DNA of 64,000 nucleotides from Saccostrea cucullata (Eukaryota), in the NCBI RefSeq assembly GCF_032062105.1, contig NW_026924061.1:62001-126000 (forward strand). Direction: 5' to 3'. Positions 10,544 to 63,137 of this stretch are shown piece by piece. Positions within the stretch are counted from its first letter, which is position 1. Every line of letters begins with the position of its first letter. The notes under the pieces were generated by a model that made no database searches, was not told the DNA's origin, and saw nothing but the letters and a program-made list of their open reading frames with translations. The translations under genes and the position numbers were made by a program.

Positions 10544-11607
10544 TCATTTTTTGCAGACACAGCTACTGTCAGTACATTTACAATTTTCAGGTCCGGTACA
10601 CCCCTTCCCACAACCGCAGGTTCCTGAAAATTTAAAAGAAAATTGCTTGAATTGATAAATATGCCATAAGTAACTAACAGCAAGAATTCTAACATACGCA
10701 AGTTATGAAGTATAACAAGTTATATAGCCAAATATTTGTAGGGCAATCAGTGGATTATAAGACACCACCCCTTCCCTCGAAATCATTTTAACTGTTTTGT
10801 TATGATATTTATGATAAAAGTGTCAGGAAAAAACTGATTTTAAGCACCCTTTTCAAAAATCGTTCAGCTTTTTTTTTTTTCTTTTATCCTTTTTACTTTT
10901 TTGTGCTTTCAAATATGGCTCTCTTTCCCAAATTTATATGAGTCAATTCAGTTGAGAACAATGATTCTCTAAATATGTCTGAAACAGTATAAATGTATAT
11001 GTACATGGTTTTTATACATACTAAGTATTCAGTGGCGAATCCAGGAATTTCGTAACTGGGGGGAGCAGTAGAAGGCAGGTGGTTTAGGGGGGGGGCTGCA
11101 ATGTAGCCCCCAGTGGTTCTAGGGCAAGGCCCTGGTGGGGGGTCCCAAAAGCTGACATACTTTTACAAATAAGAGATTTTTTTCTTTGATTTTAGGATAA
11201 CGGACAAATAAGTTTTACATACAAAAAATTCAAGGGGCGCATGCACCCCCGGCTTGCCGGCCCTGGATCCGCCTTTGGTATTTCTTTTTTTAAATAAACC
11301 TATGTACATGTATGTACATTCATGGATAAAGATATCAACTTACCGCTGCAGTTGCATTTGAGTTTACATCCGGGACATTTACAGCTGGGTCCACATTTAC
11401 AGGTGGATCCGCATTTACATCCACTTGAGGGGCAGGAATCTGCGCATTCGCACTTTCCAGCTAGAAAAAAAAATAAATTTTCATGTTTATCGAAGTATAA
11501 AGAGCGACAACTCGAACATATTACAAGGCTTGTTATCGGTAATATTTGATACACGTACAAGGAAATTGTCCCAACTTACTTTCTATGCAGTTGCAGGGGT
11601 CAGACAT
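10544..11607 (-). CDS. MT: Metallothionein MT-a (subtype A), 74 aa, 21 Cys
   Basis: Exons 11607-11580, 11460-11344, 10623-10544 with GT-AG sites; [74 protein letters not shown]; mollusc MT-I Cys pattern; AATAAA ~40 nt after the stop; non-coding exon donor ~11766. Confidence 0.95.
11030..11277. mobile_element. MITE in intron 2 of MT-a
   Basis: Ends cagtggcgaatccagg / cctggatccgcctttg; flanked by gtatt on both sides. Confidence 0.6.
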
Positions 11608-11881
11608 TTTTTTTTATCGTGTGTTTGCTGAAAGGAGAAAATGATGTTTGAAGCTATGATAATATTGGTACATTAGTCATGAAATTAATATTGATTTTTT
11701 TTCCATCAGTATCGTAAACATTGTAAAAATTCTATGTTCAATATAAAGAAAGAAAATACAACCTACCTTTTACTGTCGAGAATTGTATATTCCTTTTTAA
11801 AAGGAGTTCTTATGAGTATCACTCCCTTTGAATAAAGAATACAATATTACGTATATACACGTTATACAAATATTCAGCATC

Positions 11882-11923
11882 GTGTGCAAATAGCGATAGG
11901 TTGTATACACAGTATCGTGTGCA
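11882..11923 (-). promoter_or_regulatory. MRE pair of MT-a
   Basis: TGCACAC (MRE core TGCRCNC) at 11882-11888 and 11917-11923, just upstream of the non-coding exon. Confidence 0.85.
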
Positions 11924-12862
11924 AAATGTATAAATTTTAATATTTTTTTACAAAGTTGATAAGGGAATAACTACAGACTGTGGCATAAAACAGTAAATAT
12001 TTACTATAGCTTACATCAAACTTATCAATGTATAGCGTGTGACATAGAAAAAGGAATAAATGAATCTATTTTCAAGACTTTCCTATATTGTCAGCTTTGT
12101 CGATTATTTTTTTTTTTAAATATCGAAGTCACATTACGTGATGTTCTTGGCAGATATCCAAATTTGTATTTTAATCAGAGCTTTAGGTAATTGTGCAAAT
12201 GTACTTGTCACGAGATAGCTAAAGTATAAGATATGTACTAGTAACTGTAAAAGTACATGCGTAAATTGTAATATTTTCTCTCTCAATCTCTCAGGATAGA
12301 AATTAAAATGAAAATGTTGGAAATGGGTAAAATAAATTGTTTTAGAAAATGCATGATTTTTCAATATTTTTGTTGATTTGATAATTTTTCTGAAAAAATA
12401 TTGTGCATATATATAATTACGATTTTTCATAAAATGTTACTCAAAACATGATGCTTTATTTCTCGATCACTTCAAAACTTCACTTACATATAAAAATTGG
12501 TAATTATATCTAAGCTGTCATATGAAATTATTCTCCTAATAAATACTATACAGTTTCCTGACATTTGCGTTGGTTACGTATGTTAAATAAATGTTATTGA
12601 GAAGAAAGCCAGAAATGGGATTCAAAGAAAAACATATACGGAATCACAGTTCGGGGAAGTAAAACCTCGAAAACTTATTTTCACTTTTCAACACGGCACT
12701 ACTACAAAGTCATCAGTTAATTTGTGCCCCCATCCCCACCCCTCGCTTCTTAAATCTTTCTTAATGTATGTATTACCCGGATTCAAACAATAGACCCATA
12801 TATTTGACCCTATCAAACGCTTTCTACCTGCATCCTTTCACTCTTCAGGAGTGAACGGTCAC

Positions 12863-13273
12863 CAGGGGAGGATCCAATCTTTACCATTACAGGGGAGGAT
12901 CTAATCTCTACCATTACAGGGGAGGATCTAATCTCTAGCATTACAGGGGAGGATCTAATCTCTACCATTACAGGGGAGGATCTAATCTCTAGCATTACAG
13001 GGGAGGATCCAATCTCTAGGATTACAGGGGAGGATCTAATCTCTAGGATTACAGGGGAGGATCTAATCTCTACCATTACAGGGGAGGATCTAATCTCTAG
13101 CATTACAGGGGAGGATCTAATCTCTAGCATTACAGGGGAGGATCTAATCTCTAGGATTACAGGGGAGGATCTAATCTCTAGGATTACAGGGGAGGATCTA
13201 ATCTCTACCATTACAGGGGAGGATCTAATCTCTAGCATTACAGGGGAGGATCCAATCTCTAGTATTACAGGGG
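12863..13273. repeat. 27-bp minisatellite, ~15 copies
   Basis: Unit ttacaggggaggatctaatctcta(cc/gc/gg)a. Confidence 0.95.
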
Positions 13274-13522
13274 ATCCGATTTTTACGCCCTCTTCACAAG
13301 TATGTATTCTTTATAGATTTTTTAGATTCATCAGTTTTCTTTAACTTTCCCCGTTTTCATTAATTTGTAGCATATACTATTACATTATATGATGTATACA
13401 TGTAATATTATATTAAAGAAATATTTTCTCAAGTATAAGGAACAAAAAAAGAAACTCAATTTATGCTATATATTAGGCATTTTTGTTCCTTACAAGTGGA
13501 ATTCTATCATATAGCCATGAAG

Positions 13523-14462
13523 TCATTTCTTGCAGACACAGCTACTGTCAGGAGTGAGGTTTGCGAAAGCACAGGTTCCTGTAAATTACACAAAACATCA
13601 ACGGGAATGTAATACTGGTATCGTTTTCTTAAGTAAAAAGGAAACTAGTAAAAATATTAACAAATACATCGAATGATATACTAGTATTACTGTATGTAAC
13701 TAAAAATGAGGCCACCTAGCCTTTCAATAAACATTTTCAGTAGTAAAAAAATTTTATGGGGATAAAGTTGGTTGGGAGAACTTCCAGTTTGGTAGGGTGA
13801 TACTTTGGTGTCTGCATTTTTATCAAAATGTTGAATAGGATGCATGGCATAGATAGCAAGAAATATTAAGGAATGGCAAAATCAATGTGAAAAAAAGAAA
13901 ACCAGACACTGAACTTGTCAGTAAAAATTTTAATATTTCAATGCCATGAGTATGAGCTAGGAAGAATGATCAGGTTGGGAATCTTATATAAGAATATTTT
14001 AAAATTGATAAATAAAAATTATATATATGAGCTAGGAAGAATGATCAGGTTGGGAATCTTATATAAGAATGTTTTAAAATTGATAAATAAAAATTATATA
14101 GTTCCTTGATTGTTGTTTTTAATTCACAACAAACAGTGTCCAAGGCTTGATCATTAACAGAAAGAAACAAGCTGTAAAAGTTTCATAGTGTATATAAGAT
14201 GGTATTTCAGATGCTCTTGTATTTTACAACTAAGTTTTTAAAAAAAACATAGACCTACAGCGAAGATCTATAAAAAAAATTACCGTTCAGTTGCATTTAA
14301 CTTTACATCCGGGACATTTGCAGCTGCAGATATTTCCCGCCAAAATAATATTGTCCAAAAATTTCATACAGACAAGGAACAATAACTCTAACTATCTTGA
14401 ACCAATTCAAAATATTTCATAATACATATATTTCTTGCTAGACAGTTTCATGGATCAGACAT
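13523..14462 (-). pseudogene. MT: Metallothionein pseudogene (subtype B)
   Basis: Exon 1 (14462-14435) ATG TCT GAT CCA TGA has a stop at codon 5 and donor GT>GA; exon 2 remnant (~14339-14284) has acceptor AG>GG, a ~60-nt deletion and a stop; exon 3 (13578-13523) is 24 nt short (TCAFANLTPDSSCVCKK). Confidence 0.9.
13951..14100. repeat. 75-bp tandem duplication
   Basis: tatgagctaggaagaatgatcagg...aaattatata occurs twice with one substitution. Confidence 0.9.
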
Positions 14463-14850
14463 CGTTCTCTATCACTGATGTATCCTGAAATTATAGAATA
14501 CAAATAAAAATTATACAATACAAATTTTAAAAAATCAAATACATATGGAAAATTTAGAATACAAATAAAAATTCTACAATGCAAGTGAAAAATTTTACAA
14601 TGCAAATGAAAAATTATGCAATACAAATGGAGAATTATACAATGTAAATAAGAATAGAAAAGATCGAACACATGCCATATAAATACACAGGAACACTCAA
14701 GTTTTAAAAAGAGAGTTAATTGTTCAAAGTTGTCCGCAGTAAGGTATGTATCCGGTACATGGTTAACTCATCCTATACAAAATATGGGTTCAAAATGTAT
14801 AGGGTCCACACAAATGGTGATTCGGGGAAGACTATAGACTGTATAGCATA

Positions 14851-15232
14851 NNNNNNNNNNNNNNNNNNNNNNNNNNNNNNNNNNNNNNNNNNNNNNNNNN
14901 NNNNNNNNNNNNNNNNNNNNNNNNNNNNNNNNNNNNNNNNNNNNNNNNNNNNNNNNNNNNNNNNNNNNNNNNNNNNNNNNNNNNNNNNNNNNNNNNNNNN
15001 NNNNNNNNNNNNNNNNNNNNNNNNNNNNNNNNNNNNNNNNNNNNNNNNNNNNNNNNNNNNNNNNNNNNNNNNNNNNNNNNNNNNNNNNNNNNNNNNNNNN
15101 NNNNNNNNNNNNNNNNNNNNNNNNNNNNNNNNNNNNNNNNNNNNNNNNNNNNNNNNNNNNNNNNNNNNNNNNNNNNNNNNNNNNNNNNNNNNNNNNNNNN
15201 NNNNNNNNNNNNNNNNNNNNNNNNNNNNNNNN
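14851..15232. other. Assembly gap (382 N)
   Basis: Run of N. Confidence 1.
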
Positions 15233-15900
15233 ACTAGAGTAAGATAGTTTTTGTAACAAGACATAATGTTCTTTCAGTATTCGTAAATATATTTATGTAA
15301 AATATTATTTTCAGTACGATATTGTGTACTGTGATTTCCTTTGATTTTTTTTTCTTCAGATTTTCCCTAGATTTCTCTTAAAGCTTTTGAGGCTTATTTA
15401 CATTTCTGACATTTAATTTGGTGATATTTAAAAAAAAAAACGGTTTTGAGCAAAATCTCAGACAATTCTAAATTTTAAAGAAATATAATTATTTGGAATC
15501 ACGGTTTGATGAGATAAAACCGTGGACACCGATTCTTACTACGGCTTAAAACTGCTAAAGAATTACCAGTTTATCTGTGCCCCCCTCGCATCCCTTTGCG
15601 GGGAATCGAGTTCGTATTCCCCCTAAGAATGTTAGATCCTATTAATTAAATTATTATACCTATTTCTGAAATTGACCCTATTAATTATTTCCTACCTTGT
15701 TTCACACATTGGATGTGATTGGTAAACTATAGGGGGATACTAACTCCTCCTAGGCACCTGATCCCACCTCTCTGATTTCCACAAGTCCGTGTTTTATACC
15801 CCCTTAACAGATTTGTATAATTGTTTATAGATTGTTGAGATTGCTCACTGTTTGTTAGCTTCCCTTTTTTATTATATCATACGCTATATAATATCATGTA

Positions 15901-16501
15901 AGGGGTGTTAAGAAAGTTCGTTCCTTGATGAAATATTTTCAAAAATTTCAAAGTATAGTGCTTAACTAAAGAGATGAATTTTCTAGTATGAAAAAAATCA
16001 CAAGACTGTGCTTTAGATTTATAGGAATTCATTTCAAGCAGGAAGCTATAGGATATTTCTTCCGAATGAATATATACATAACATCTTTAAAGCACCCGAA
16101 TGATAGAAATGCTAGTCATTTTGAGTAAAAATAAAGAATTGTTCTTGCATCACACAAGCTGGTGAGCGTAGATATAAGAACGATAGATCATTTTCAAAAG
16201 AATAGGTTTGTCATTTTCTCATTCTTCACCGACTTAATAATTTTTGTATAGTACTAGTATTTGAAAGGATGTTTTGACTAATAAATGTCACAAATATGCG
16301 TCACCCCTGATTTTTCTGCACAGACATCATCTGTTTTAATGTCTGCCCTCCCCCTATTGATTCAACAAAAGACAATGAAAACTTTATCAGTAGCCAGAAT
16401 GGACTCTATAAACATGAAATATAACACATTGTAAATATTTTCTCGTCATATTTTTTATCGAAAATAAAAGAAAAATGTGGAATGAACTTTCTTAACACCC
16501 T
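15901..16501. mobile_element. TA-flanked MITE (Tc1/mariner-type ends)
   Basis: TIRs ag(g)ggtgttaagaaagttc / gaactttcttaacaccct with TA on both sides; right part repeated at ~21557-21688. Confidence 0.7.
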
Positions 16502-16669
16502 TAATATAATAATATGATAATATTTTCTCGTCAAGTCTATACGTGTACTGTCGTAAAACAAAGTATAAGGAGCTTAAAGAAAAAAAAGTCAAGAAACACT
16601 TCATCTATGGTAAAATATGCATTTATTATATAGTTCTTTATAATTGAATTCTGTCACATGGCCAGGCAG

Positions 16670-18072
16670 TCATGTTTTGCAGACACAGCTACTGTCAGTA
16701 CATTTACAGGACTGGGGTCCAATGCATCCCTTTGCGCAAGCACAGATTCCTGTAAATAAAAAAAATGCTAGACATGAAATATCCTGCATGTTTATAGTGA
16801 AAGGTGCAGCCAAAAAAAATTAAAGCTTAACACCCCCACTCCAAAGAAAAAACTTTGAATTTAAAAAAAACAATGTAAAAGAAAACTATCCAGAATTCAA
16901 AATCCTAATCCTAGTAATCCTGAGTGGGAGGGGGTGTTATTAACAATAAAATCCTATATATAAATATGTTTCTACATTATGGAGAGAAAAATTAATAGAC
17001 GTAATAACGCCAAAATGGCGTAATAACGCGAAAAAAGCATCATTACGTCTTTTCAAAAGACGATAAAATTCATCAAAATGCATTTTTTACGCTTTTTGGA
17101 AAGGCCTTGGCAGGCCCGTTCATTTGAAGTTACTGAGGAGTGAGGGGTCCGAAAAAATTGACAAGCAAGCAAAAAGCAGACAGGCTATTCTCTCCTTACT
17201 TGGCCTTTCCAAAAGGCGTTGTTATGCCTTATAATTTTTTTTCTCTGTAAATTGATTCTAATAGGCTTTAGTTCCAACCAGACTTTCAATAAACACTTCG
17301 CGTTTCAAGAGGAAAAAGTTATGCTCGGAAAAAGTGGCGTAAGGGGCTTCCCCCTCCCTAGTACTTCGTGCCTGCATTTTTATCTAATTGTTGAATATGA
17401 TCTAAGTGATTCTCAATCAGCAAGAAATATTTAGTAAATAAAAATGAGAAGGAAAAAATAATAGCGACAAAACTATGTTTGGCATAATCAATGTAAATAA
17501 AAGAAAACACACCCCCTACAAACAATATTATTTTGTTTTTAATGTTTTGGTTTTTTAATGTTATGTATACCAAAAGAACACATGATCTGAGTCTCCTAGA
17601 AAATATTTGGAAGGCACTTATCATAATTGTTTGTGGGTTTGTTTGTTTCAAAAAATTTGAAATACTACCCCTGCCAAAATTTGAATAATCTTTTCAACTA
17701 GAAGAAAACACTTATATGTCTGATAGAGAAATAGAGGTAGTAGTACAAAGCAGTAGGTATTTTAGATGAATATTCATTTTTCCAAAGTGTATGAAAATAT
17801 CCCCCTACCATTACAGTTGCAATTCACTTTACATCCGGGACATTTACAGCTGGATCCACATTTACACCCGCCCCCACATTTACAGCCACTTGATGGACAC
17901 GGGTCTGCGCACAGACATTTGCTGGCTGAAAGAAAATTTAAATCAATTCATTTCATGCGGACAAGGATCGATAACTCTAACAGCATTGAACCAATTAAAT
18001 GGGGCAAAATACATGTAGAACCAATTCAAAATAGAGTAACTTACTTGCTAGACAGTCGCATGGATCAGACAT
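16670..18072 (-). CDS. MT: Metallothionein MT-b (subtype B), 74 aa, intact ORF but promoter deleted
   Basis: Exons 18072-18045, 17925-17809, 16749-16670; MSDPCDCLATSKCLCADPCPSSGCKCGGGCKCGSSCKCPGCKVNCNCNGICACAKGCIGPQSCKCTDSSCVCKT. Confidence 0.9.
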
Positions 18073-18731
18073 TTTTGTTTATTTATGATGTTTTCTGGAA
18101 AAGTTATTTAAGTGCCTGAAGACATTGTAAAACAAACAAGTATACTGTTATACATGTATGTGCATTCATGTGGTAAAATACAACTGCAATATTTCATATA
18201 TACATGTAAAGGCTTATATGTATTTATGCCAAAAGTTTGCATGCAGGGATACAATGTACAAGCATTTTTTATACAGTGTTTTTAAAGTGTTTCTTCAGAC
18301 CTGTTAGGCTCAAGATATTGTATTTATGATTTCTAATTTAGAAAAAGAAAATCAAAATTCATACTTGTTCTGGTCATAGATATCATAAACAATGAATAAT
18401 TGAATAAATTACTTGCGGAAAATCACTCTACATTGCATTTTTATACATTTGTACTAGTTTGTTAGAAAATAGTACCAAATGCATACACAACTGCCCTTAA
18501 AGTGATATTTACAATATATATATTTTTTTTAACCAACACGTACTTCATACTTAATCACATTTAAATTTATATGTTGGAGTGGGGAGTCATAATTATTTGG
18601 GGGATTCTGTGAGCTACATGACCACCATTCCCTTCAAGAAAAACAAATAAATAAAGAAACCCTCCATTTACGATATATTATGCAATTATTATTTTGTTCT
18701 TCACATAGAATTCTCTCAAGTGACCAGGGAG

Positions 18732-19522
18732 TCATTTCTTGCAGGCACAGCTATTTTCGGTATATTTACAGGACTATGGTCCGGTGCATCCCTTTGTGCA
18801 AGCGCTGGTGCCTGTAAATTTAAATTTTAAAAAATATATATATTGATTGATGAGGATGTCTTGAAGTATTTAACAAGAAGACATATACATTATATTATTA
18901 TATTTACATTCATTGTATACATGTATATTCAAATAAATGCAATGCAACACAATACAACGACACCAGCCTCACCACACGCCTTCCCCAGGAATTTTTAGTT
19001 CTCTGTAATGCATTTCTGCAAAAAAAGCTAGAAATTTTGGCTTTCCTCTCTTAAAAAATGCTAGGCAATGATTTTTGTTTGTGCGTTTGTTTGCTTTTGA
19101 AATTTCAACTGTAAAATTGACATCCCCTAAATTTGATCAGGGTGTGTATCTCAGACTTTAATTGAGAACTTGAGGTACTGTGTGTTTTGTTGCCCCCCCC
19201 CTTTTGTAATACAGGGTGTTGTCTGAGGAAGAGAAAATTATTTTTTTTAAATACAATGATATTAATGAGAAAAATAATTAATTTCCTACTCATTTTTTTC
19301 ATCATACAAACAGTATTGTAAATCCCCTCCAGTTCTAAGTAAATAGAAAATAAGAACTTAAAAAGTGTATATTAATTATTCCTTGTACAAAGAAGCGCTA
19401 AGTATTTTCTCACAACTATATATAGAATAAAATATGAATACACACACATGTATAGAAACGTTATACAAATTTTCAGAATCGTGTGCAAAAATTGATAAGT
19501 TGTATATACAGTACCGTGTGCA
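18732..19522 (-). pseudogene. MT: MT relic unit 1: last exon plus promoter, coding exons 1-2 absent
   Basis: Exon-3 homolog 18811-18732 with internal TAG and two Cys losses; MREs at 19481-19487 and 19516-19522. Confidence 0.85.
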
Positions 19523-21854: not shown

Positions 21855-23259
21855 TCATGTTTTGCAGACACAGCTACTGTCAGTGCATTTACAGGACTGG
21901 GGTCCAATGCATCCCTTTGCACATGCACAGATTCCTGTAAATAAAAATTGCTAGACATGAAATATCGTGTTTTAAGTGAAAGGTGCAGCCAAAAAAAATT
22001 AAAGCTTAACATCCCCTCCCAAAGAAAAAACTTTGAACTTTATAAAAAAAAAACATTGAAAAGGAAAACTATCCAGAATTCAAAATCCTAATCCTAGTAA
22101 TCCTGAGTGAGGCAGGGGGAGGGGGTGTTATTAACAATAAAATCCTATAAATATGTTTCTGCGTTATGGAGAGAAATATTAATAGACGTAAGAACGCCTT
22201 TTGAAAAAGGCGTAATAACACCAAAATGGCGTAATAACGCGAAAAAAAGCATCATTACCTCTTTTCAAAAAGCGATAAAATTCATTAAAATGCATTTTTT
22301 GCGCTTTTTGGAAAGGCCTTGGCAGGCCCGTTCATTTGAAGTTACTGATGGGGGAGGGGTCCCAAAAAATTGACAAGCAAGCAAAAAGCTATTCACTCCT
22401 TACTACGCCTTTCCAAAAGGCGTTATTATGCCTTATAATTTTTTTCTCCGTAGATTGATTCTAATAGGCTTTAGTTCCAACCAAACTTTCAATAAACACT
22501 TCGCGTTTCAAGAGGAAAAAGTTATGCTCGGAAAAAGTGGCGTAAGCCCCCCCCCCCCAGTACTTCGTGCCTGCATTTTAATCTAATCGTTAAATATGAT
22601 CTAAGTGATTCTCACTCAGCAAGAAATATTCAGTTAATAAAAATGCGAAGGAAAAAATAATAGCGACAAAAATATGTTTTGAATAATTAATGTAAAGAAA
22701 ACACACACCCTACAAACAATATTATTTTGTTTTTAATGTTTTGGTTTTTTTAATGTTATGTACCAACAAGAACACATGATCTGAGTCTCCTAGAAAATAT
22801 TCGGTAGGTACTTATCATAATTGTTTGTGGGTTTGTTTGTTTCAAAAAATTTGGAGAACTATCCCTGCCAAAATTTGAATAATCTTTTCAACTAGAAGAA
22901 AACACATAGGTCTGATAGAGAAATAGAGGTAGTAGTACCATGCAGTAGGTATTTTAAATGAATATTCATTTTTCCAAAGTGTATGAAAATATCAACCTAC
23001 CATTACAGTTGCAATTCACTTTACATCCGGGACATTTACAGCTGGATCCACATTTACATCCGCCCCCACATTTACAGCCACTTGATGGACACGAGTCTGC
23101 GCACATACATTTGCTGGCTGAAAGAAAATTTTAAATCAATTCATTTCATACGGACAAGGATCGACAACTCTAACAGCATTGAACCAATTAAATGGGGCAA
23201 AATAGAACCAATTCAAAATAGAGTAACTTACTTGCTAGACAGTCGCATGGATCAGACAT
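21855..23259 (-). CDS. MT: Metallothionein MT-c (subtype B), 74 aa
   Basis: Exons 23259-23232, 23117-23001, 21934-21855; MSDPCDCLATSKCMCADSCPSSGCKCGGGCKCGSSCKCPGCKVNCNCNGICACAKGCIGPQSCKCTDSSCVCKT; non-coding exon donor 23460. Confidence 0.95.
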
Positions 23260-53282: not shown

Positions 53283-54077
53283 TCATTTTTTGCAGACACA
53301 GCTACTGTCGGTACATTTACAACTTTCAGGTCCCGTGCAGCCCTTTCCACAACCACAGGTTCCTGCAAATTTCACAAAACAGTTTTATGTAATTGATGAA
53401 TAAGTCCTAATTAACTTTTAAAAGATAATAAAGAATATAAAAGGGAAATAAATTATGAATAAATGAAGTCAAAATATATGTAAGTAATCAGTAAAAAAAA
53501 AAAAGACCTCCAAAAGTAAAACCTTTGAGTTTTAAAATTTTGAAAGTGTAATGATAAATATCATTAAGAAAAAGTCTTGTTTTCAAATGTTCTTTTAAAA
53601 GGTTGAGATGAATTTTTTTTGTTTTGTGCCGTTAAAAAAAAATTGGGCACAGCGTGCCTCCTCATACAAGTACATTGAACTTGAGTCTGATGTAGATACA
53701 ATGTTTTTGTTTTTGTTTTTGTTGTTTTTTTTTTAATGAATATAAGGTATTTTAAATGACAAATTTTCTTTCTGACATTTAAATGCATATCTTTGGGCAA
53801 ACGACTTACCGCTGCAATTGCATTTGACTTGACATCCGGGACATTTACAGCTGGGGCCACATTTACAGGTGGGTCCGCATTTACAACCACTTGAGGGACA
53901 GGAATCTGCGCACAGACATTTCCCGGCTAGAAACGGAGAAAATGAGCATACTATAATTATATGTAAATCGACGTATGAAGAGCGACAACTCGAAACTTTC
54001 AAATGGCCAAATCATTGGTATTTGGTACAAGGAAATTCATATAACTTACTTTCTGAGCAGTTGCAGGGGTCAGACAT
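53283..54077 (-). CDS. MT: Metallothionein MT-h (subtype A), 74 aa
   Basis: Exons 54077-54050, 53926-53810, 53362-53283; [74 protein letters not shown]. Confidence 0.95.
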
Positions 54078-54338: not shown

Positions 54339-54409
54339 TGCACACGTTATTCAAATATTCAGTTTCGTGTGCAAATAATCAATAGGTTGTATACACAGTA
54401 TCGTGTGCA
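54339..54409 (-). promoter_or_regulatory. MREs of MT-h
   Basis: TGCACAC at 54367 and 54403, opposite strand at 54339. Confidence 0.85.
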
Positions 54410-55710
54410 AAATGTATAGAGTCTATACAAAGTTGATAAGGAATGTGTATCTATAGACAGTATAATTAATTTAGCATAAAACTTATAAAAATTCATAGCT
54501 TACATCTAAGTTATCAGTGCAATTAGAACAGAAAAAAATGGACTTAAAATACATATATACAAGTGTATCATAAACATTTATCTAAGTATAAAATCAGCTG
54601 AAATTGTTTCATTATTAATTTTATTGTTATAATTTTGTCAAATCACTTTTCATGTGATCATCTCTACGTTTTTGGCAGAGGTCCATATAAATGCACTTTA
54701 CGCAAATAGTCTGTTGGACTTTAATTAGTCGATTTAAAATACTTGTGTACTTGTCACGAGATAAATAAAAAATATACATGTATACAGAATGTACAAAATG
54801 TGTTTGAAAACTCTCTCTCTCTCTCCAACTATAAGTGCGCGGATCCGTGGGAGTGGGGTAGGGATTGGGGTGGAGTGGCGGGGGGAGGGCGGGGGTGTCG
54901 GAACTCCCACCCGCTGGAAGGAGGTAGTTTATTTGTCTTGGAGGAGGAGTTGGCGTGGATCCTCACACGTAATGATTGTAAAATAAGCAGAATTCTATAT
55001 TTGTAAATTAAGAAGACCATGACTTGGTACATGTAGGTTAATTACGAAACTTTTATTCGGTCACATACATTTCACTACCTATCCTTTTTTGGTCTGTAAA
55101 ACTACCTTGGTTGGGATGAAGGGTATGCATATTTTGCCAGCTTTTTATCAATTCAAAACAAATCTATCCTTCGTAACGCGGATCGCTTTGAAATATTTCC
55201 TACATGTATCATTCTAAAACTTTATCATCCCTGCGTCATAATGACTGAGATTAGTATAATACCGACAACGGAAATTCTTATCACTGCATTTAACTGCATT
55301 TTACATGATCATTTTCAGTTGTGACAAATTATTTAAGCTTTATCGACTGTTATATTATGTTATACATTCACCGCACGGACGTAATTTTGTTGTTTTATGC
55401 AGGTTCTTGTATAGAACACAAACCATAATCCACAGCTGACTCTCACGTTCAGAAAAGTTATGTGTAGATGCATGATTACAGTGTACAAGATCAATGGCCT
55501 TGTCACGATTTGCATTTCGCTCTTTTAAAGATTTCTTTTTTTCTAAATTTTAAAATTATTTGTGCATACAAAAATGTTTTGAGAGTATTACTTTTATCTA
55601 TTTGTTATCGTGGTGTTCTGCAGGTTTCATGCATTTTGCTCGGCCCAGTAAATCAAAATTAATATTAAAGTTATTTTGTGTCTAAATATATACACAGTAT
55701 ATATCCAAAG

Positions 55711-55957
55711 CAAAGGCGGATCCAGGGCCGACGCGCCGGGCGTGCCCCCCCCCCCCCCCGTTTGAAGTTTTTGTATGTAAAACTTAATTTATATGTCCAT
55801 TATTTTAAAATCAAGGAAAAGACATCCTTTATATGTAAGAACGTGTCAGCCCCGGACCCCCAAAAAGGACCTTGCCTTAGACCCACTGGGGCTAAGCCAC
55901 CAGAACCCCCATGCCTTCTACTGCGCCCCCGTTACGAAATTCCTGGATCCGCCACTG
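55711..55957. mobile_element. MITE (same end family as 11030-11277)
   Basis: Ends caaaggcggatccagg / cctggatccgccactg; flanks atatc(c)aaag duplicated; absent at the paralogous site ~44410. Confidence 0.75.
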
Positions 55958-57796
55958 ATATCAAAGGAATTTGATGTATTGACAATGAAATTCAAACAAA
56001 CAGAAGTGCGGAAAAAGGGGGCTTAGGCTGTTGGTTAAATATTACCGAATTCTGACTCAACCTCAAGGGCATATTTCATTTTCAATTTGTCCTTCAAAAG
56101 ATTACGATGAATGCGTTTAGTTTACAAATAAATTTTATATTGAAATAATTAAATATAGTTTCACTCAAAATTAGACACGAAACTCATAATGTTGACCCTG
56201 ATTACCAAACACAGACTTCCTGTGTAATGCTACGTATACACAGATTTTTGACATCTTGGGTATTGGGGGTCTCCAGGTAAATAACACCACTGTTACTTCG
56301 ACCACTCCCCCTCCTCAGGTCACCGTACGGTAAAAAAAAAATTGTCTTTTTTTTAATCCTTGGAAAAAATTGTGATGGCAGCAAGGATAATATAATTAAA
56401 TATATTCTTATATTTAAGATGCGTGAATGACAAATCGATAATAACACAAACTACAGTTAATTTCAGTGCCGTATATACATGTATTATTTCATAGAATTTC
56501 ACATCTTAGATCTGAAAGAATTTTCGATTGATGTTTGAATTTCATCAAAAAATGAATGCATTTTGCATATGGAATATAATTGAATCAACATGTAAAACTT
56601 TTAACACACTACGCTGTTATTGAAATGATAATATATAAAACCAAGGGCGCACTGATTGAGATTGCATTTATTTACAATTAATTCAATTTCAAATGAAATA
56701 TTTAGATAAATCTAAATTATCATAAGCGAAAACTTAAACACTTCATTTTCAGTATAATAGCATATCCAAAATTCATCTAACTTTTTGTATGTACCTTGTC
56801 CCCTTTTCACTACTGGGAGATTGATATTTCAGAAAAATAATTTAAGCCTGGATTATAAAATCAATTAATTTTAGGTGATCAGGCTTCAAGACCAAAAACT
56901 GAGAACACAATAAGTCTGTAGTTTGGGATTTTGCATGTTTTTCTTTTTTTTTAATTTGTGCTTAAAAATACATGTACGTTATGATTGGATCCTTGTTACA
57001 CTCGCTGATATTCGCCCGAATTTCTATCCCAAGTATAATTCAAAAGTAAATGAGAGGCTGCTGTGTAAATTTCAGACGTTAATTAATTATGTAATGTTGA
57101 GAATATACCACGCCTTACTGAAAGTCCAAGGATAACAGAGAATTGTAATATTACACTGATGCTCATTCTCTCGAAGGTAATACAAGGTTGATCAATTTAA
57201 TGCAGTCACTTCTGCAAAACAGTAAACAGTTTCAGTGTCTTTCAATGCAAACTAGACATAATTTAAAGTAATTTTAATGTTGTTTACATCTTCATACATC
57301 AATCGCATCATCTAGGATATTTAAGGTCGAAAAAACAACCTCGTATGAATTACGTAAACGCCATGACCCCCCCCCCCCCCTTTTCACAAACTTTAAAATA
57401 AATGTTGGAAGACCTCATTTCTGTGAAATATGGAGTTAAACTTGATCAAAAATACACAACAGAAGGAACTTTTAACTCCGTCTATTCTATACATGTAGTT
57501 AAATAAACAGAAAATTTAAATATTTTAAAACATTCGGTGTTGTCAATTTACATATGCATTGGAGGTTGTTTTTCCGCTGGTCGGAAAGGTCCGAGAAGCT
57601 GCAATTGCTGCATATATACGTGTTTCTAGCTCCAGACTGTACATAGTCAAAACCTGCAGTTTCATTGCAATGAAATTAAATACAATTACCTCTGTTTACT
57701 TGGAAACGAAAAGACAGATGTAACAAGAAAAACAGTTTAATGTGTTCTTTGTTTGTGAAACTTAACAAATTCTCGGATCACCGTTGTACTGTTTAG

Positions 57797-58310
57797 TCAC
57801 TTTTTGCAGCAACAGTCATTTGCGCATTTGCAAGATTCAGGTGCGGTGCAGCCTTGTCCACAGGCGCAATTACCCGCTAAAAAAGATAAAGCATTTTTAT
57901 TATTTTCTTGTTTCTTTTACTAATCCTGCATTATAAATGTTACTTTACAAGTTAAATCCTTAGCTTATTTTATATATACAAAAATTGGAAATTCGTATGC
58001 TTTTAACTCATTTTTAACCATATGTCATATATTTAAAATTAAACAGTCAATCAAATCATTCCATTCAAACTTACCGGTGCAGCTGCATTTCACTTGACAT
58101 CCGGTGCACTTGCACCCGGGTCCACACTTACATCCGGATCCACATTTACATCCGCTACGTGGACAGGTTTCCCCGCACTCACATTTTCCAGCTGTAAATA
58201 GTCAAAGATCGATAACTCTAATAATTTTCATGATACAGATAGAAACTGCGTTGTTTAATAAAATGCGCAAATCATTACTTACTTTCTAAGCAATTGCAGG
58301 GATCAGACAT
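57797..58310 (-). CDS. MT: Metallothionein MT-i (subtype C), 74 aa, 22 Cys with C-terminal CCC
   Basis: Exons 58310-58283, 58191-58075, 57876-57797; [74 protein letters not shown]; non-coding exon donor 58529. Confidence 0.93.
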
Positions 58311-58636
58311 TTTTGTGGTTACCTGTTGAAAGGAAATTAAATTTTCATTAACATGCATTCTATCTCTACAAAATGTTGTAAAAGGTAGCTAGATTTGTGT
58401 AATTTAAAATTGGCGTTCAATTAAATTAATTATGCTAATTTTTTTCTAGAATATATTCTAGTTGCACATCAATATTTTAAATAACAATTATCAGAGTTAT
58501 CAAATCCTTAGATTAAAAAGAGGACATACCTTACTGCGTCAAAGCTAAACTGTTCACACCACGCGTGTTTGGCGCCAAATAAATGAGGTTCCACGAATTA
58601 ACAGGATATGGGCCGGTAAAAAAAAAAGGCGGTGCC

Positions 58637-58646
58637 GTGTGCACAC
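58637..58646. promoter_or_regulatory. Palindromic double MRE of MT-i
   Basis: GTGTGCACAC contains TGCACAC on both strands. Confidence 0.75.
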
Positions 58647-60165
58647 TACATACGTAGTCTGTTCCGGGGAGTCAAAACATAAAATTACGTATTTTGAGTT
58701 AAACCAAGCAATGTAAATTTAAATAAGTTACAGTTTCATATGTTTTATACACTATAGGGCTAAGTGACGCAGCAAGCCTAATGCAGAGAATTTGTTTCCC
58801 CAGCTTAGGGAAAAAAGAAAAGTATGCACAGTTCGGGGGGGGGGGGGTGTCGGACCCCCCCCCCCCTCCGTGGACTTGTAATGAAATTTAATACCGTAAC
58901 TCCCTAGGGCCTCTCTCATCCCCTCAAAGTGTCCCGCCCTGTTTTTAAAATTATTATTTATTGTATTAAAAGTCGCTTGGCACTGTTTTTAGCACAGGGG
59001 CATGTGGAGAGGTATTTGATTTAAACATACATTGTATTTTATTGAACACAATCAATGGGATTGGACACAAGTTATACCAACTTTAGTTAAGTTAGAGATT
59101 TAGTAAGTATCATTTAGGTTGTCGGTGGACTTTATATTCTTATTACATAGAATTGTTTAGTAAAGGCTAAATTAGACACCATGTATTGTGTAAAATTTCG
59201 ACAATATCGAAAATGAATGTAAACATTATATGTGACATAAGGTTTGCATTAACTATGATAGTATTCTGAAATGAAAAAAAAAGTTATTACGTCTCATTGT
59301 ACAAACCCATAACAGTGTGATAAGTATTCAACATAAAAACAAATATTCTATACACATAATAAAGAATAAGCAATTAAGGGTACTTACCACAAACAAAAAA
59401 TGGATGTGCGGGTTGATATATATTTTTTGACTGATTTTGATTTGTAATGACATAAATAATAAATCCCTGAAATATAAAGAAATCGTAGGTTTTCCTTGGT
59501 GCTTAGATTTGAGATTTAATTTTGCCTTCTATATAATTCGATACAAAATTTTGCACAATTTTTTAACTTGATGACAAAATCTTATAAAATTCTCTCACTC
59601 TACTTGGTAAACATTATTCAGGTTGTCAATTTAAATGTAAATTTATGAGAAATAATGCTGATTTCTGAAAAAAGTTTGTTTGTGTTATTTATCCTTAAAT
59701 CTTTATATCCATACTGGTATTTTTATTTGCTTTAATATACATATTTCTACAAATTCAGGGGGGGGGGGGTAATCTTCAGTACATAATTTAATATTTCTGC
59801 AAATCCGGGGAAGGGAGGGAGGGCGGACTCAACCCGCAATCTGAGCGTCCTTCTTTCTTTCTTTTTTTTTTCCTTCAGCGGGGCACAGATATTTCCGGAA
59901 TAAGCTTGTGTTTTGAACCATTAAAATTGTGAAGATGGGTAGATTTTTAATGTAGATAATTTACTTCTAAACTGAAATAATTTTGATCCGCAAATTTTAT
60001 AGTCAGCAACAGTGTAGAGGGCGCTTGATTCGATACTAACTGAAAAATTGATTTGAAACACGGATAACAGAGGCGAGGTTGTCGTAATTTGGCATCTTTG
60101 GGCCTGTATACCACAGGTGTTTGTGGACAGGACCCTACTTTTAGGATGCACTCCACTTCTATGAT

Positions 60166-60530
60166 TTAAGGAATCACTGTCTAGTTCATATAGTATGCCA
60201 GGGTATCAACGATAGTGGGAAACATGGGATAATTTGCATAAATTATCCCATGTTTCCCACTATCGTTGATGTCCCTGGCATACTATACGAACTAGACAGT
60301 GATTCCTTATACATGTATTTCCATTTCATTGTGAAATGAAATTGTAGATTTAGATTTTTCTTTTACAATTTTATTTCACAATGAAATGGAAATACAAGGA
60401 ATCACTGTCTTACTTAGTATAGTATGCCAGGGACATCAACGACAGCGGGAAACATGGGATAAATTATCCCATGTTTCCCACTATCGCTGATGCCCTGGCA
60501 TACTACACTAACTAGACAGTGATTCCTTAA
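60166..60530. mobile_element. TTAA-ended triple-hairpin foldback element
   Basis: Hairpins at 60167-60309 and 60396-60529 share sequence; a third hairpin lies at 60315-60395; ends ttaaggaatcactgtc / gacagtgattccttaa. Confidence 0.75.
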
Positions 60531-62045
60531 ATTACTATAATCTTAATATAATTTTCTTTATTTTTTTATCTCTTACTACCATCCTTCATCTACACATTCC
60601 TGCTCATTAAAAAATCACCTTTAAATCCGACACATCACCTTTCTATATACCAGGATATAATATTTATAGGAGTATTGGATGTTAGAATTTGCATCTGCCT
60701 CAGATTTCAAGGCAAAGTAAGCAAAATATAATTTTTAAAACCTTATTCATGAGTTTTTATTTCATCGAGGTAATGAAAAAATAAAGCCTTAACAACTGCA
60801 TGGAAAATCCTCAATGTGTACATTCTAACTTCACCACAAATAATAATAATTTTGACAAACTGTATTTGAAGTGTGAACAGATTATCATATTCATGTATGT
60901 TTTTGTTGATTTCTTATTTTACTGAAAGTCAATTCTGGATTTGAGATTTTGTTTTTAGAATTTAATATTATATGCTTGTATATTACCACGTGGTATCGAA
61001 AACTTATGTAACACGAGAAATTATAAACACATATACTTGACAAATGTATACTTTAAAGAAAATGAGTAACCCATTACACATATTATCATTTTATTATTAA
61101 ACTGTCGACAACCGAGTGAAAAACCACAAAGTGCTTGTCATTTTTAGCATGATTACAAAACTATACAATGTTATTGTCAATTTTTTGTTATATACTAGCA
61201 CTGTACCTATAAATTTGGTTCATATATATATAATCTTTACTAAAATGACAGGTATTTTTAAAGTTAAATTAAAGCGGTCATGAAAAGTAAACGTTTTACC
61301 ACTGAGTGGGATACTAGAGACTTTTTTCCACGTTGTATCATACTGATATTATAATTTAGCGGACGAGTTGTCAAATACATGTATTCATACACACACTATT
61401 TCTGTTGGCCACACAAAGTCTTACCCCCTGCTCACCAACAGTTATTTCGCTAAAATGTCAATTAAATTTCTACAAGTTACCAATTTTTGTTTCCCTTATA
61501 CATGTACAGCGTATACAATAATTTCTCTGCTAAAAGTGTCCACTCAAACCTTTAGAAAATTCCTCTATGTGTATGTTCAGTGGCAGAACAAACTCTTCCC
61601 AGGATTCTTGCTCTTTGGTTTTGATGTTTGTTTGATAAATGAAATTAATTTAGTTTTCGTGAAGTCTCAGTCATATATGGTGTAAATTTTGAATATATAC
61701 CAGATGGCAGTAAATTCAAAATTTAAAACACCGCATCTCCATAACTTAGTTGACATAAAACTGAAGCACAGAAAAGGTTTTAAGAAATTTATTCAAGAAA
61801 ATCATATCGAACACGTTCAACTTGACAAAAAGGAGGTATATTGTTTGATAGATCACAGAATTAATAACAATATTAATATTGACTTTTATACTAATATTTT
61901 TTTTTAGAAAATATACACACAAAAACCAATGTCGCGATCATCCGTTGAATTGGCACCCATAGGTTATTTTTATTATTTTTTTTTTTAACTTTTTTTTTTG
62001 CAGAAAAAAGTCTTGACCTTCCTACTTCTTAACTCCCCCATGACG

Positions 62046-63137
62046 TCACTTTTTGCAGCTACTGCAGTCGGCTTTTTCACATTTGCCAGTCTCAGTGTTC
62101 TGACAACAATCCTTTGTACCTAAAAGATTTACATTGTAACTTTTAATTGCATCTTATTTTAGTATTTGCCTTTTCTACAGAACATACATTTACAATCAAA
62201 CCTTTTGATGCTTCGATTTTGAGGTTTTCGAGGATATAGGAGATACCGAGCTCCAATATAATATATTATGTGAAAATGTGATTGAAATAAACTGCCAAAC
62301 CACTTCGAACTATCACTGGTTTCGAGACACAGATATGTGATTTAATACTACTATGTAAAATGCATATAAACAAAATGTGAATTTGTATAATGAACAAGTT
62401 TCGTACTTTTTTATGTACATGCAGAAGTTGAATATTCCAAGAATATGGGACCTTTTTTTTCAACGATCAATAAAAATTCTCAAAGTGAACTTTTTTTCAT
62501 TTGAATTGTTTTCAATAGAAGTTGAAACAAATAAACCCCCGTGTGACTCCGTATTAGGATTCTTACCAGCACAGCAGGCTTTGGTGGGACGCTTACAGTT
62601 GCCACATTTACAGATTCCGCCCGGTTCTGTACAATTACAACCAGGCCCGCACCTACAGGATCCACCCGCAGGTTTCTCTTCTAAAATTAAACAAGAGAGT
62701 TTTTTGGTAAGCATTGTTATAGTACATGAACAGAGAAATAGACATTGAACTTTTATGATAAATGGTACATGTTCTTGCAACTCAAATTAGAAAATGGAAT
62801 ATGTACTTTAGATGAGGGTAATCGTTATTTGTTTGATGAATTTTGGTCTTCGTTGCTTTTAAAATTATTTCCTCTTTTAATTGACATGTTAACCAATGAA
62901 TAGCGTCTCCATCCAAGTTAATATTTTTGGAGATTTTAAACTTAAAAAGGGTAGGTAAGGTTTGGTATATTTTTCGAAATGATGTGTACTAAGAGAGATA
63001 ACTCTAAAATATATATAATTTACAAAAAGAGTTACCCGAACATAAGAAATAATATTGCTATTTTGGATTTAATTTCATGGGTTATAAATAGATGGACACT
63101 TACTTTCACAGCATTTGATCTCTCCTTGGTCAGACAT
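62046..63137 (-). CDS. Divergent metallothionein-like protein MT-j, 73 aa, 16 Cys with CC doublets
   Basis: Exons 63137-63104, 62680-62567, 62119-62046, all GT-AG and phase 1 like the neighbours; MSDQGEIKCCEKEKPAGGSCRCGPGCNCTEPGGICKCGNCKRPTKACCAGTKDCCQNTETGKCEKADCSSCKK; acceptor 2 nt before ATG and non-coding exon donor at 63285. Confidence 0.85.

What the first reader, a model, noticed from the sequence alone, without database searches (positions are those of the whole stretch)
11506..63006. Conserved intronic 10-mer GAYAACTCKA in the first coding-region intron of all 11 MT loci
Seen on the + strand: GACAACTCGA 11506, AATAACTCTA 14381 (pseudogene, 1 mismatch), GATAACTCTA 17970, GACAACTCTA 23163, GATAACTCTA 33105 and 39231, GACAACTCGA 42265, GATAACTCTA 50191, GACAACTCGA 53984, GATAACTCTA 58211 and 62997. 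It persists between subtypes whose introns look otherwise poorly alignable (91 bp to 2.3 kb) and in the divergent MT-j. Its distance to the acceptor ranges from ~20 to ~320 nt, so it is not a fixed-position branch point, and it is not an MRE. Inference: an undescribed cis-element (transcription-factor site, partly GATA-like, or RNA element U(A/C)GAGUU(A/G)UC) coordinating the cluster.
Basis: partly seen in the sequence, partly recalled or inferred. Interest (0 to 1): 0.75.

Follow-up and report, generated by a model that had tools for sequence, protein, structure and literature searches.

The report
Conserved intron motif in metallothionein genes
Every metallothionein gene copy in this oyster-type genome keeps the same roughly 19-letter word in its first coding intron, but the same word also sits in hundreds of unrelated places and in several mobile-element families, so it is a real conserved element of unknown function, not a switch special to this gene cluster.

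Summary
There are 10 exact GAYAACTCKA copies and one 1-mismatch copy at the stated places (0.39 expected). The genes lie on the minus strand, so the gene-strand word is TMGAGTTRTC. It is the core of an 18-19-nt block, TTMGAGTTRTC-NN-TCYTT(G). Eight further MT loci outside the window, four of them on other contigs, carry it too (19 of 19 loci).

It is more conserved than shared ancestry alone predicts:
- Intron 2 of the same genes shares no 10-mer beyond chance.
- Closely related pairs differ at 3/72 block sites against 58/366 flank sites.
- Dead gene copies have lost more of it.
Without the divergent MT-j gene, however, the deep-branch evidence is only suggestive.

It is not cluster-specific. 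The bare 10-mer is at chance density genome-wide (8,933 vs 8,876). The 18-mer occurs 882 times against 11 for its reversed control, in three large repeat families and about 28 other contexts, some of them unique DNA. In repeat copies it decays like its flanks.

Best reading (about 0.4): a binding site for an unidentified sequence-specific DNA-binding factor, kept in MT intron 1 and also carried by transposable elements. Rivals are a splicing or branch-region element and a neutral relic. I found no support for "coordinating the cluster". Cross-species data could not be obtained.

The parts
11499..11516 (-). Locus A: 18-nt block TTCGAGTTGTCGCTCTTT in intron 1 (11461-11579, 119 nt), 45 nt from exon 2
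14374..14391 (-). Locus B (pseudogene: stop in exon 1, donor and acceptor lost): TTAGAGTTATTGTTCCTT, with 1 core mismatch
17963..17980 (-). Locus C: TTAGAGTTATCGATCCTT in intron 1 (17926-18044), 44 nt from exon 2
23156..23173 (-). Locus D: TTAGAGTTGTCGATCCTT in intron 1 (23118-23231), 45 nt from exon 2
33098..33115 (-). Locus E: TTAGAGTTATCGCTCTTT in the 2286-nt intron 1 (33073-35358), 32 nt from exon 2 and 2244 nt from the donor
39224..39241 (-). Locus F: TTAGAGTTATCCTTCCTT in intron 1 (39185-39280, 96 nt), 46 nt from exon 2
42258..42275 (-). Locus G: GTCGAGTTGTCGCTCTTC in the 622-nt intron 1 (42200-42821), 65 nt from exon 2
50184..50201 (-). Locus H: TTAGAGTTATCGTTCCTT in intron 1 (50108-50221), 83 nt from exon 2. 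A second, decayed copy of the unit lies about 35 nt further 3' (tandem duplication)
53977..53994 (-). Locus I: TTCGAGTTGTCGCTCTTC in intron 1 (53927-54049, 123 nt), 57 nt from exon 2
58204..58221 (-). Locus J: TTAGAGTTATCGATCTTT in intron 1 (58192-58282, 91 nt; splicing confirmed by contigs), 19 nt from exon 2
62990..63007 (-). Locus K (divergent MT-j): TTAGAGTTATCTCTCTTA in intron 1 (62681-63103, 423 nt), 97 nt from the donor and 316 nt from exon 2. The intron sequence is unique in the genome
40100..40175 (-). Orphan exon-2 fragment upstream of locus F. The homologous place reads TAAAATTAAA (4 of 10 core letters changed), while the neighbouring GATCTTTC and CATGAAA boxes remain

Best explanation
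The 10-mer is the core of an 18-19-nt asymmetric word. On the gene strand it reads TT-A/C-GAGTT-A/G-TC-NN-TC-Y-TT-(G). The ancestral metallothionein gene already carried it in its first coding intron, and all 19 descendant loci found in this genome have inherited it.

In working MT genes it evolves several-fold more slowly than the intron around it, so it is probably functional there (shown only statistically).

The identical word, including a 19th letter G that was not part of my search pattern, recurs in about 30 unrelated contexts among 100 sampled genomic places. These include three abundant interspersed-repeat families and unique DNA. The most economical mechanism (inferred, not shown) is therefore that it is the recognition site of one sequence-specific DNA-binding factor, for example a multi-zinc-finger protein. 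Such a site would be spread by transposable elements, decay neutrally in most of their copies, and be retained by selection where it is used. In the MT genes it would act as an intragenic, non-MRE transcriptional input next to exon 2.

It is a property of each gene, not a device that coordinates the cluster.
For: 1. Presence in every MT locus found. 13 loci have an exact core and 6 have one mismatch, out of 19 exon-2 loci: 11 in the window, 4 elsewhere on the contig, and 4 on other contigs.

2. Excess conservation.
- Among five subtype representatives the best shared 10-mer of intron 1 is the motif, with a total distance of 2. The last 120 nt of intron 2 give 7, and 100 shuffles give 6-11.
- Four closely related pairs differ at 3/72 block sites against 58/366 flank sites (Fisher 0.008).
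- Four independent deep contrasts differ at 9/72 block sites, where fourfold sites differ at about 0.30 (P = 4e-4).
- Core mismatches are 6/40 in four dead copies against 4/160 in 16 intact-looking loci (Fisher 0.005).
- In locus H one copy of a tandem duplicate has decayed while its flanks stayed identical.
- A roughly 88%-identical contig of another organism's run differs from the J intron at 9 listed places. None lies in the 10-mer, and 2 lie at the two N positions.

3. The same word occurs elsewhere.
- The 18-mer is found 882 times against 11 for its reversed control, while the bare core is at chance (8,933 vs 8,876).
- The first 100 listed places fall into families of 29, 26 and 8 copies plus 28 other contexts.
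- Two tested singletons are unique DNA.
- Letter 19 is G in 19 of 31 contexts (background 0.16, P = 2e-8) and in 11 of 18 MT copies.

4. Copies inside repeats are passengers. In 39 members of family F2, chosen by their flank alone, the word diverges 0.057 per site against 0.063 for the flanks.

5. The genome-wide copies show no link to 3' splice sites (4/31 vs 23/155 control anchors). The MT introns show no RNA structure (z 0.0 to 1.5). Both point away from an RNA role for the word as a class.
Against: - No factor is known. The word matches no transcription-factor consensus I could recall, and recall is not a test.
- No chromatin, binding or expression data were available.
- Without the divergent gene K the deep-branch test is only suggestive (6/54, P = 0.07).
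- Fourfold sites between the other subtypes differ by only 0.18-0.43, so much of the identity is what moderately recent duplication would leave.
- A DNA-level site does not explain why the word stays 19-83 nt from exon 2 in 17 of 19 loci even where the intron grew to 622 or 2286 nt.
- 'Intact-looking' was judged from exon 2 and exon 3 matches only for the loci outside the window.
- The singleton contexts were tested for uniqueness in only 2 cases.
- The window of best conservation was chosen after looking, so the P values are optimistic.
Confidence: 0.4

Rival explanations
1. RNA-level splicing element. The block marks the 5' edge of the 3' splice-site region of the short first coding intron. 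Its 3' half (TCYTT-N-A-Y) supplies or frames the branch point, and the core binds a splicing factor that helps define the acceptor.
For: - The word lies 19-83 nt from exon 2 in 17 of 19 loci. It stays there when the intron expanded upstream (E 2286 nt, G 622 nt).
- In the E-type loci conservation runs unbroken from the word to the acceptor, and stops sharply at its 5' edge.
- yUnAy-like strings directly follow the core in subtypes a, e and j and in F and H (sequence read).
- The stretch between word and acceptor is poor in AG. There are 4 AG against 12.1 expected over nine loci outside the E-type and K (Poisson 0.007; the loci are related, so this is not independent).
- Dead genes lose the word.
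Against: - K has the word 316 nt from its acceptor with 11 AG in between.
- C and D (and the pseudogenes B, L036 and L060, which sit with the f subtype) have no A at the candidate branch position.
- In H the perfect copy is the distal one.
- A branch region does not need 18-19 specified letters.
- Genome-wide copies are not followed by 3' splice-site-like sequence more often than control anchors (4/31 vs 23/155). Their flanks show no T/A skew (mean 0.024, t = 1.3).
- There is no similarity or complementarity to this genome's U2 snRNA beyond shuffles.
Confidence: 0.22
2. Neutral relic. An ancestral intron sequence, possibly a fragment of a mobile element that carried the word, was copied with each gene duplication and has simply not yet decayed. 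It has no function in the MT genes.
For: - Fourfold sites between subtypes a, c, e, f and j differ by only 0.18-0.43. The block differs by 0.11-0.32, so the contrast is modest.
- Other short intron boxes also survive between subtypes a, c and f.
- Without K the deep contrast is not significant (P = 0.07).
- In two close pairs (C/D, L051/L052) the block is no better kept than the flanks.
- The word is abundant in repeats, where it evolves neutrally.
Against: - Intron 2 of the same genes, which is equally old, shares no 10-mer beyond chance (7 vs 2).
- Pooled close pairs give 3/72 vs 58/366.
- Decay is greater in dead copies (6/40 vs 4/160).
- K keeps 10/10 of the core and 17/18 of the 18-mer as read in locus E, although its fourfold sites against the other genes differ by 0.64-1.0. 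Its intron has no repeat homology.
Confidence: 0.28
3. A structured or processed intronic RNA (mirtron, snoRNA or other Rfam family), or a site that pairs with a second copy in inverted orientation.
For: In K, a 9-bp inverted partner (one G-U pair) lies about 30 nt upstream of the word, and the donor-proximal ACTCTA in C and D could pair with it (sequences read).
Against: - No Rfam family reaches threshold in the window or in 15 motif loci.
- Seven short introns fold no better than shuffles (z 0.00 to 1.49).
- At up to 2 mismatches, an inverted partner within 200 nt appears at H (2 mismatches) among the 18 MT copies scanned, and at 1 of 13 other loci. None appears within 1.5 kb, except at L016.
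Confidence: 0.03

Closest known systems
Intron-1 regulatory region of the sea urchin metallothionein gene SpMTA
   Same: A metallothionein gene whose first intron carries cis-regulatory sequence that works alongside the MRE promoter.
   Different: That region was defined by reporter assays and has different sequence motifs. Here nothing functional was tested, and the word is shared with hundreds of non-MT places.
Transcription-factor or insulator sites spread by transposable elements, such as CTCF sites in rodent B2 SINEs (recalled general knowledge)
   Same: A long asymmetric word occurs in the consensus of several repeat families and also at unique sites. The repeat-borne copies decay neutrally, while the copies in working genes are kept.
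   Different: No binding protein, ChIP signal or footprint is known. The word resembles no motif that I could name.
Branch-point and 3' splice-site region of U2-type introns
   Same: The position is 19-83 nt upstream of the acceptor in most loci. yUnAy-like strings sit just 3' of the core. The stretch down to the acceptor is poor in AG.
   Different: - It has 18-19 specified letters instead of a degenerate pentamer.
- It is not at a fixed distance.
- K and the C/D subtype do not fit.
- The genome-wide copies are not near acceptors.
Metal response element (MRE, core TGCRCNC) and GATA sites (WGATAR); both consensus strings are recalled
   Same: Both are short cis-elements expected in or near MT genes. 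Some copies contain GATAA.
   Different: The word has no TGCRCNC. Six copies read GACAA, and most GATAA copies have C or G at the W position.

Membership tests
GATA-factor site | WGATAR on either strand (consensus recalled) | tested here: not met
   On the + strand only K reads AGATAA. C, E, H, J, L051, L052, L053 and L060 read CGATAA, F reads GGATAA, and B and L058 read CAATAA. A, D, G, I, L032 and L033 read GACAA. The 19th copy, L036, has GATAA, but its flanking base was not printed in the form used here.
Metal response element | Core TGCRCNC (consensus recalled) | tested here: not met
   No copy of the 18-mer contains the core on either strand (sequences).
Branch-point region of a U2-type intron | A yUnAy branch adenosine about 15-50 nt upstream of the acceptor, with no AG between it and the acceptor | tested here: inconclusive
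   Candidates directly 3' of the core exist in subtypes a, e and j and in F and H, but not in C and D or the pseudogenes B, L036 and L060. K is 316 nt away. There is AG depletion of 4 vs 12.1 expected. No lariat data.
Known structured RNA family (Rfam), mirtron or snoRNA | A covariance-model match, or a fold more stable than shuffles | tested here: not met
   0 matches at gathering score in the window and in 15 loci. z-scores are 0.00 to 1.49 for 7 introns.
Fragment of one of the interspersed repeat families that carry the word | Homology to the repeat beyond the word itself | tested here: not met
   The flanks of the MT copies do not resemble the flanks in families F1-F4. K's intron has only its self-match in the genome. 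The shared 18-19 letters alone cannot show descent from a repeat.
Terminal inverted repeat of a DNA transposon or MITE | A second, inverted copy at the other end, and one flank that varies between copies | tested here: not met
   No inverted copy lies within 1.5 kb in 29 of 30 loci. In the three large families both flanks are conserved. The ends of family F2 only loosely resemble the word (by eye).
Cluster-specific coordinating element (locus-control type) | Restricted to the cluster, or to a controlling position in it | tested here: not met
   The word is present in MT genes on four other contigs and at 882 places genome-wide.
Sequence-specific protein-binding site (DNA level) | Demonstrated binding, a footprint, or loss of activity on mutation | not testable with these tools
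   Support is indirect only: conservation in working genes, recurrence in unrelated contexts, and neutral decay in repeat copies.

The most novel reading that the evidence does not exclude
TTAGAGTTATC-NN-TCTTTG is a genome-wide cis-element of this oyster lineage, read by a so far unidentified sequence-specific factor. At least three transposable-element families seeded it around the genome. Purifying selection has held it in the first coding intron of every metallothionein paralog, including the divergent 16-Cys gene. There it gives the metal-response genes a second, MRE-independent regulatory input.
Probability: 0.3. Interest if true: 0.6.

Novelty: new member of a known kind. Interest (0 to 1): 0.4.

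Why it matters
Oyster metallothioneins are widely used markers of metal exposure, and their regulation is usually explained through promoter MREs alone. A conserved intragenic element kept through at least 19 duplications would be a concrete second handle on their expression or splicing. It is short enough to test by mutation, pull-down or footprinting.

The wider point may be the more useful one. The same 19-letter word is about 80 times over-represented genome-wide, in repeats and in unique DNA. That is how binding sites of dedicated DNA-binding proteins look in better-studied animals, and no such motif-factor pair is characterised in bivalves as far as my searches went (listings only).

If it turns out to be a neutral relic, the result is still useful as a caution. 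Tandem paralogs share intron words by descent, and a word that looks cluster-specific inside one window need not be so in the genome.

Tried and rejected
A protein search with the stop-to-stop frame that holds exon 2 of locus A gave one hit only (P0001; 2 candidates). A pattern scan of metagenome contigs with a conserved exon-2 string gave 22 stretches. None is a bivalve-type MT gene, and the only 1-mismatch core hits lie upstream of the two pattern matches in L070, a single site that I take for chance.
- RNA structure and known RNA families: rejected.
- Inverted-repeat partner or TIR pair: rejected.
- U2 snRNA mimic or complement: scores lie within shuffles, with the fraction of shuffles at or above the observed score running 0.22-0.95.
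- Splice-acceptor association of the genome-wide copies: none.
- Orientation bias by T/A skew: none.
- Coding potential around nine singleton loci: the ORF list was uninformative.
- Literature: four searches were seen as listings and abstract starts only. One paper (PMC5412396) was read as seven found passages. None mentions this word.
- Earlier notes of the scan gave nothing on the word.

Flawed steps that I replaced:
- One search stopped on a script error.
- trimmed away J's copy and included exon 1. Its numbers are void, and one search replaces them.
- The close-pair counts (2/72 vs 27/316) were my by-eye estimate. The computed values (3/72 vs 58/366) replace them.
- The 7/72 entered is replaced by 9/72.
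- The 18-nt frame called 'block' runs from 2 nt 5' of the 10-mer to 6 nt 3' of it. That is one letter 5' of the true 18-mer, which slightly inflates block differences.
- In one search MAFFT aligned H's decayed proximal copy to the word, and the upstream flanks of subtypes a and e are poorly aligned. The flank rate of 209/322 is therefore inflated.
- In one search my clustering filter missed three small families (L087/088/093/102, L085/112, L137/148). I merged them by eye.

Full report
WHAT IS THERE. The window holds a tandem array of three-exon metallothionein (MT) genes on the minus strand. Nine start codons of the type ATGTCTGAYCC were found directly. Locus E starts MPATCNCSE at 35386, and the divergent locus K starts at 63137. 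Cys-rich second and third exons follow each start. The only database relative found, P0001, is a 74-residue protein that its source names 'metallothionein-like [Saccostrea cucullata]'. By eye, its pieces equal the three exon translations of locus A.

THE OBSERVATION. Shuffles give a mean of 0.39, and none of 100 reaches 10. The eleventh copy, at 14381, has one mismatch. The nine other one-mismatch hits lack the flanking extension and fit the chance expectation of 10.3. In the transcript sense the word is TMGAGTTRTC.

With GT-AG models, each copy lies in the intron that follows the 28-nt first coding exon (34 nt in K). Intron lengths are 91-2286 nt. The distance from the word to exon 2 is 19-83 nt in ten loci and 316 nt in K.

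For J the model is confirmed. Contigs of runs X7 and X5 skip exactly 58192-58282 (91 nt, CT..AC on the + strand). They also skip intron 2 and a 207-nt intron in the 5' untranslated region, so 'first coding-region intron' is the right wording.

The assembly gap at 14851-15232 lies 461 nt from the nearest copy and touches no intron 1. I could not test continuity across it, and no conclusion here depends on it.

THE ELEMENT IS LONGER AND OLDER THAN REPORTED. Aligning the copies on the word shows a block of 18-19 letters, TT-M-GAGTT-R-TC-NN-TC-Y-TT-(G). A search of the whole assembly (1.17 Gb) with P0001 found exon-2 matches at eight further loci. Four are elsewhere on the same contig, and four are on contigs C8726, C13386, C15332 and C7787. 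All eight have the block upstream of exon 2. Three have an exact core and five have one mismatch. So 19 of 19 MT exon-2 loci carry it, and none without it was found. Seven of these eight copies lie 30-43 nt from exon 2. In L036, a likely pseudogene, an insertion has pushed it to about 385 nt.

IS IT MORE THAN SHARED ANCESTRY?

For constraint:
- Among representatives of five subtypes (I, C, F, E, J), the best shared, non-low-complexity 10-mer of intron 1 is the word itself, with a summed distance of 2. The last 120 nt of intron 2 of the same genes give 7, no better than shuffled sequence (6-11 in 100 shuffles, none below 6).
- In four closely related pairs the block differs at 3 of 72 sites and the aligned flanks at 58 of 366 (Fisher 0.008).
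- In four phylogenetically independent deeper contrasts (I-A, C-F, E-L053, J-K) the block differs at 9 of 72 sites. Fourfold-degenerate sites of exon 2 differ at about 0.2 for the first three and 0.67 for J-K. The binomial P is 4e-4 at a mean of 0.30.
- Core mismatches number 6 of 40 letters in four dead copies: B, L036, L060 and the orphan exon-2 fragment at 40.1 kb. They number 4 of 160 in sixteen intact-looking loci (Fisher 0.005).
- In H a 35-nt unit is tandemly duplicated. One copy of the word is perfect. The other has about five changes, while the duplicated flanks are identical.
- A roughly 88%-identical contig from another organism's run differs from the J intron at nine listed places. 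None is in the 10-mer, and two are at the two N positions. That table was truncated, so this is weak.

Against constraint:
- Fourfold sites between subtypes a, c, e, f and j differ by only 0.18-0.43, and the block by 0.11-0.32.
- Without K the deep contrast is 6 of 54 (P = 0.07).
- In the pairs C/D and L051/L052 the block is no better kept than the flanks.
- Subtypes a, c and f share other short boxes.
- I chose the block after seeing it.
- Within subtypes, conservation continues 3' of the word, and in the E-type loci it runs through to the acceptor. It stops sharply at the 5' edge of the word.

IS IT COMMON GENOME-WIDE? The bare 10-mer is at chance density: 4479 + 4454 = 8,933 matches against 8,876 for the reversed control, about 7.6 per Mb. 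Ten in 64 kb is therefore a real local excess. The 18-mer pattern that I derived from the MT copies, however, occurs 433 + 449 = 882 times against 5 + 6 = 11 for its control.

I fetched the first 100 listed places and clustered them on their flanks with the word masked. Three families hold 29, 26 and 8 places. Seven small families hold 2-4 places each. 21 are singletons. That makes 31 distinct contexts. The flanks of the families resemble neither each other nor the MT introns.

Two singletons tested against the genome are unique DNA. One also has a 92%-identical second copy, probably the other haplotype, in which the word is intact.

The letter after the 18-mer, which was not in my pattern, is G in 19 of 31 contexts (background 0.16, P = 2e-8) and in 11 of 18 MT copies. 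That is independent evidence that the MT block and the dispersed word are the same thing.

In the largest family (at least 1,613 first-look candidates) I took the 39 best matches to a flank segment that excludes the word. 22 of the 39 keep the exact 18-mer, and it diverges from the consensus at 0.057 per site against 0.063 for the flanks. It therefore decays neutrally there.

WHAT IT IS NOT.
- Not an MRE, and not a consistent GATA site: six copies read GACAA, and only K has WGATAR (the consensus strings are recalled).
- Not a known RNA family, and not a stable fold (z 0.00-1.49).
- Not one arm of an inverted repeat.
- Not similar or complementary to this genome's U2 snRNA beyond chance.
- Not a fragment of a recognisable repeat in K, whose intron has only its self-match.
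- Not a cluster-restricted signal.

HOW IT MOST LIKELY WORKS. What is shown is a word of 18-19 letters that is inherited by all MT paralogs, evolves more slowly than its surroundings in working copies, and recurs in many unrelated contexts. The rest is inference.

A long, asymmetric, information-rich word that sits in the consensus of several mobile-element families, decays neutrally in their copies, and is kept at particular host sites is the pattern known for binding sites of dedicated DNA-binding proteins (general knowledge, recalled). I therefore rank a DNA-level factor site, acting as an intragenic transcriptional input, first, at about 0.4.

The main rival is an RNA-level role in 3' splice-site or branch definition, at about 0.22. 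It alone explains the steady position near exon 2 through two intron expansions, the branch-like strings 3' of the core, and the AG-poor stretch (4 vs 12.1 expected). It fits badly with K, with the C/D subtype, and with the lack of any acceptor association among the genome-wide copies (4/31 vs 23/155).

A neutral relic, perhaps of an ancient mobile-element insertion, keeps about 0.28, because the family is not very old by its fourfold sites. A T/A-skew test for strand bias relative to transcription was uninformative.

COMPARISON WITH WHAT IS KNOWN, AND NOVELTY. The nearest precedents are the intron-1 regulatory region of the sea urchin SpMTA gene and transposon-borne factor sites such as CTCF sites in B2 SINEs. 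Both are recalled, and neither was read here. I found no paper that mentions this word or an intronic element in bivalve MT genes. Four searches were seen as listings only, and one paper was read as passages. Subscription journals, where the oyster MT gene-structure papers appeared, are not covered.

I class it as a new member of a known kind, namely a conserved non-coding element shared with mobile elements, and not as a new kind of system. Interest is moderate. The element is real and testable.

LIMITS.
- No cross-species DNA could be obtained.
- Only one intron was verified by reads.
- All runs laid were contigs, so neither depth nor absence is informative.
- The gene model of K and the intactness of the loci outside the window were not verified.
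- Uniqueness was tested for 2 of 21 singletons.
- Several P values come from related sequences and from a window chosen after the fact.

Noticed in passing
window 58320-58527 (minus strand): Locus J has a 207-nt intron in its 5' untranslated region, just upstream of the ATG at 58310. Contigs of runs X7 and X5 skip it with CT..AC ends on the + strand.
   Followed up: partly
G000:C6198 at 27782, 31092, 51490 and 53986; C8726:20924; C13386:381343; C15332:464904; C7787:154342 (loci L032, L033, L036, L060, L051-L053, L058): The MT family extends beyond the window. There are four more loci upstream on the same contig, two of them apparently dead. There are also four E-type genes (GKCQC...EFQ...) on other contigs, some of which may be alternative haplotypes of each other.
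   Followed up: partly
window 40030-40175 (minus strand): An orphan exon-2-like fragment sits upstream of locus F, with no exon 1 or exon 3. The intron word in front of it has decayed (4 of 10 letters), while neighbouring boxes survive.
   Followed up: partly
window 50108-50221 (minus strand): Intron 1 of locus H contains a tandem duplication of a roughly 35-nt unit. The two copies of the word differ at about five letters, although the duplicated flanks are identical. L033 has a smaller partial duplication of the 5' half of the word.
   Followed up: partly
L004 and 28 other loci (family F2); ends seen in L004, L005, L008, L011, L015, L018, L028: This is a MITE-like element of about 730 bp with imperfect terminal inverted repeats of about 35 bp and at least 1,613 first-look candidates in the genome. 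The 18-mer lies about 160 nt from its right end. By eye, its right terminus (...ACTATCGTTCGCAGTTCTTT) loosely resembles the word.
   Followed up: partly
L022:1250-1770 and L194: One unique-DNA copy of the word lies inside what looks like a 275-nt GT-AG intron, in sense orientation. It sits between open frames, one of which contains GGNDIS. The second copy on contig C6767 is 92% identical over the stretch by the search's figure (96% mean column identity in the alignment), and the intron is at least as well kept as the flanking frames.
   Followed up: no
L014, about 280 to 40 nt upstream of the word: An open frame (…RERVFRDRTNPLDFLNDQEVIERYRLPR…) resembles, from memory, the N-terminal part of Harbinger/HARBI1-type transposases. 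The word lies in a possible 70-nt intron just after it, flanked by an 8-bp inverted repeat (CCGAGTCC / GGACTCGG). No family search was run.
   Followed up: no
G000 contigs C5565, C15113, C5039, C6734, C407: U2 snRNA genes stand in long tandem arrays with a spacing of about 1.72 kb. 48 were scored, all at about 187 bits.
   Followed up: no
window 2630-5339 (+ strand): Two identical 223-codon open frames lie 2,038 nt apart (2630-3301 and 4668-5339). Each holds a Cys-rich stretch (…PGCHDDCCCICNRRYCPHCQHLCQ). It is a tandem duplicate of unknown nature beside the MT array.
   Followed up: no
L070, L076, L079, L081, L082 (metagenome contigs): Unrelated low-GC metagenome contigs encode long runs of CKCG-type repeats (for example CKCGDD and CKCGSQ units), apparently MT-like genes of other small eukaryotes. 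They are not bivalve-type.
   Followed up: no
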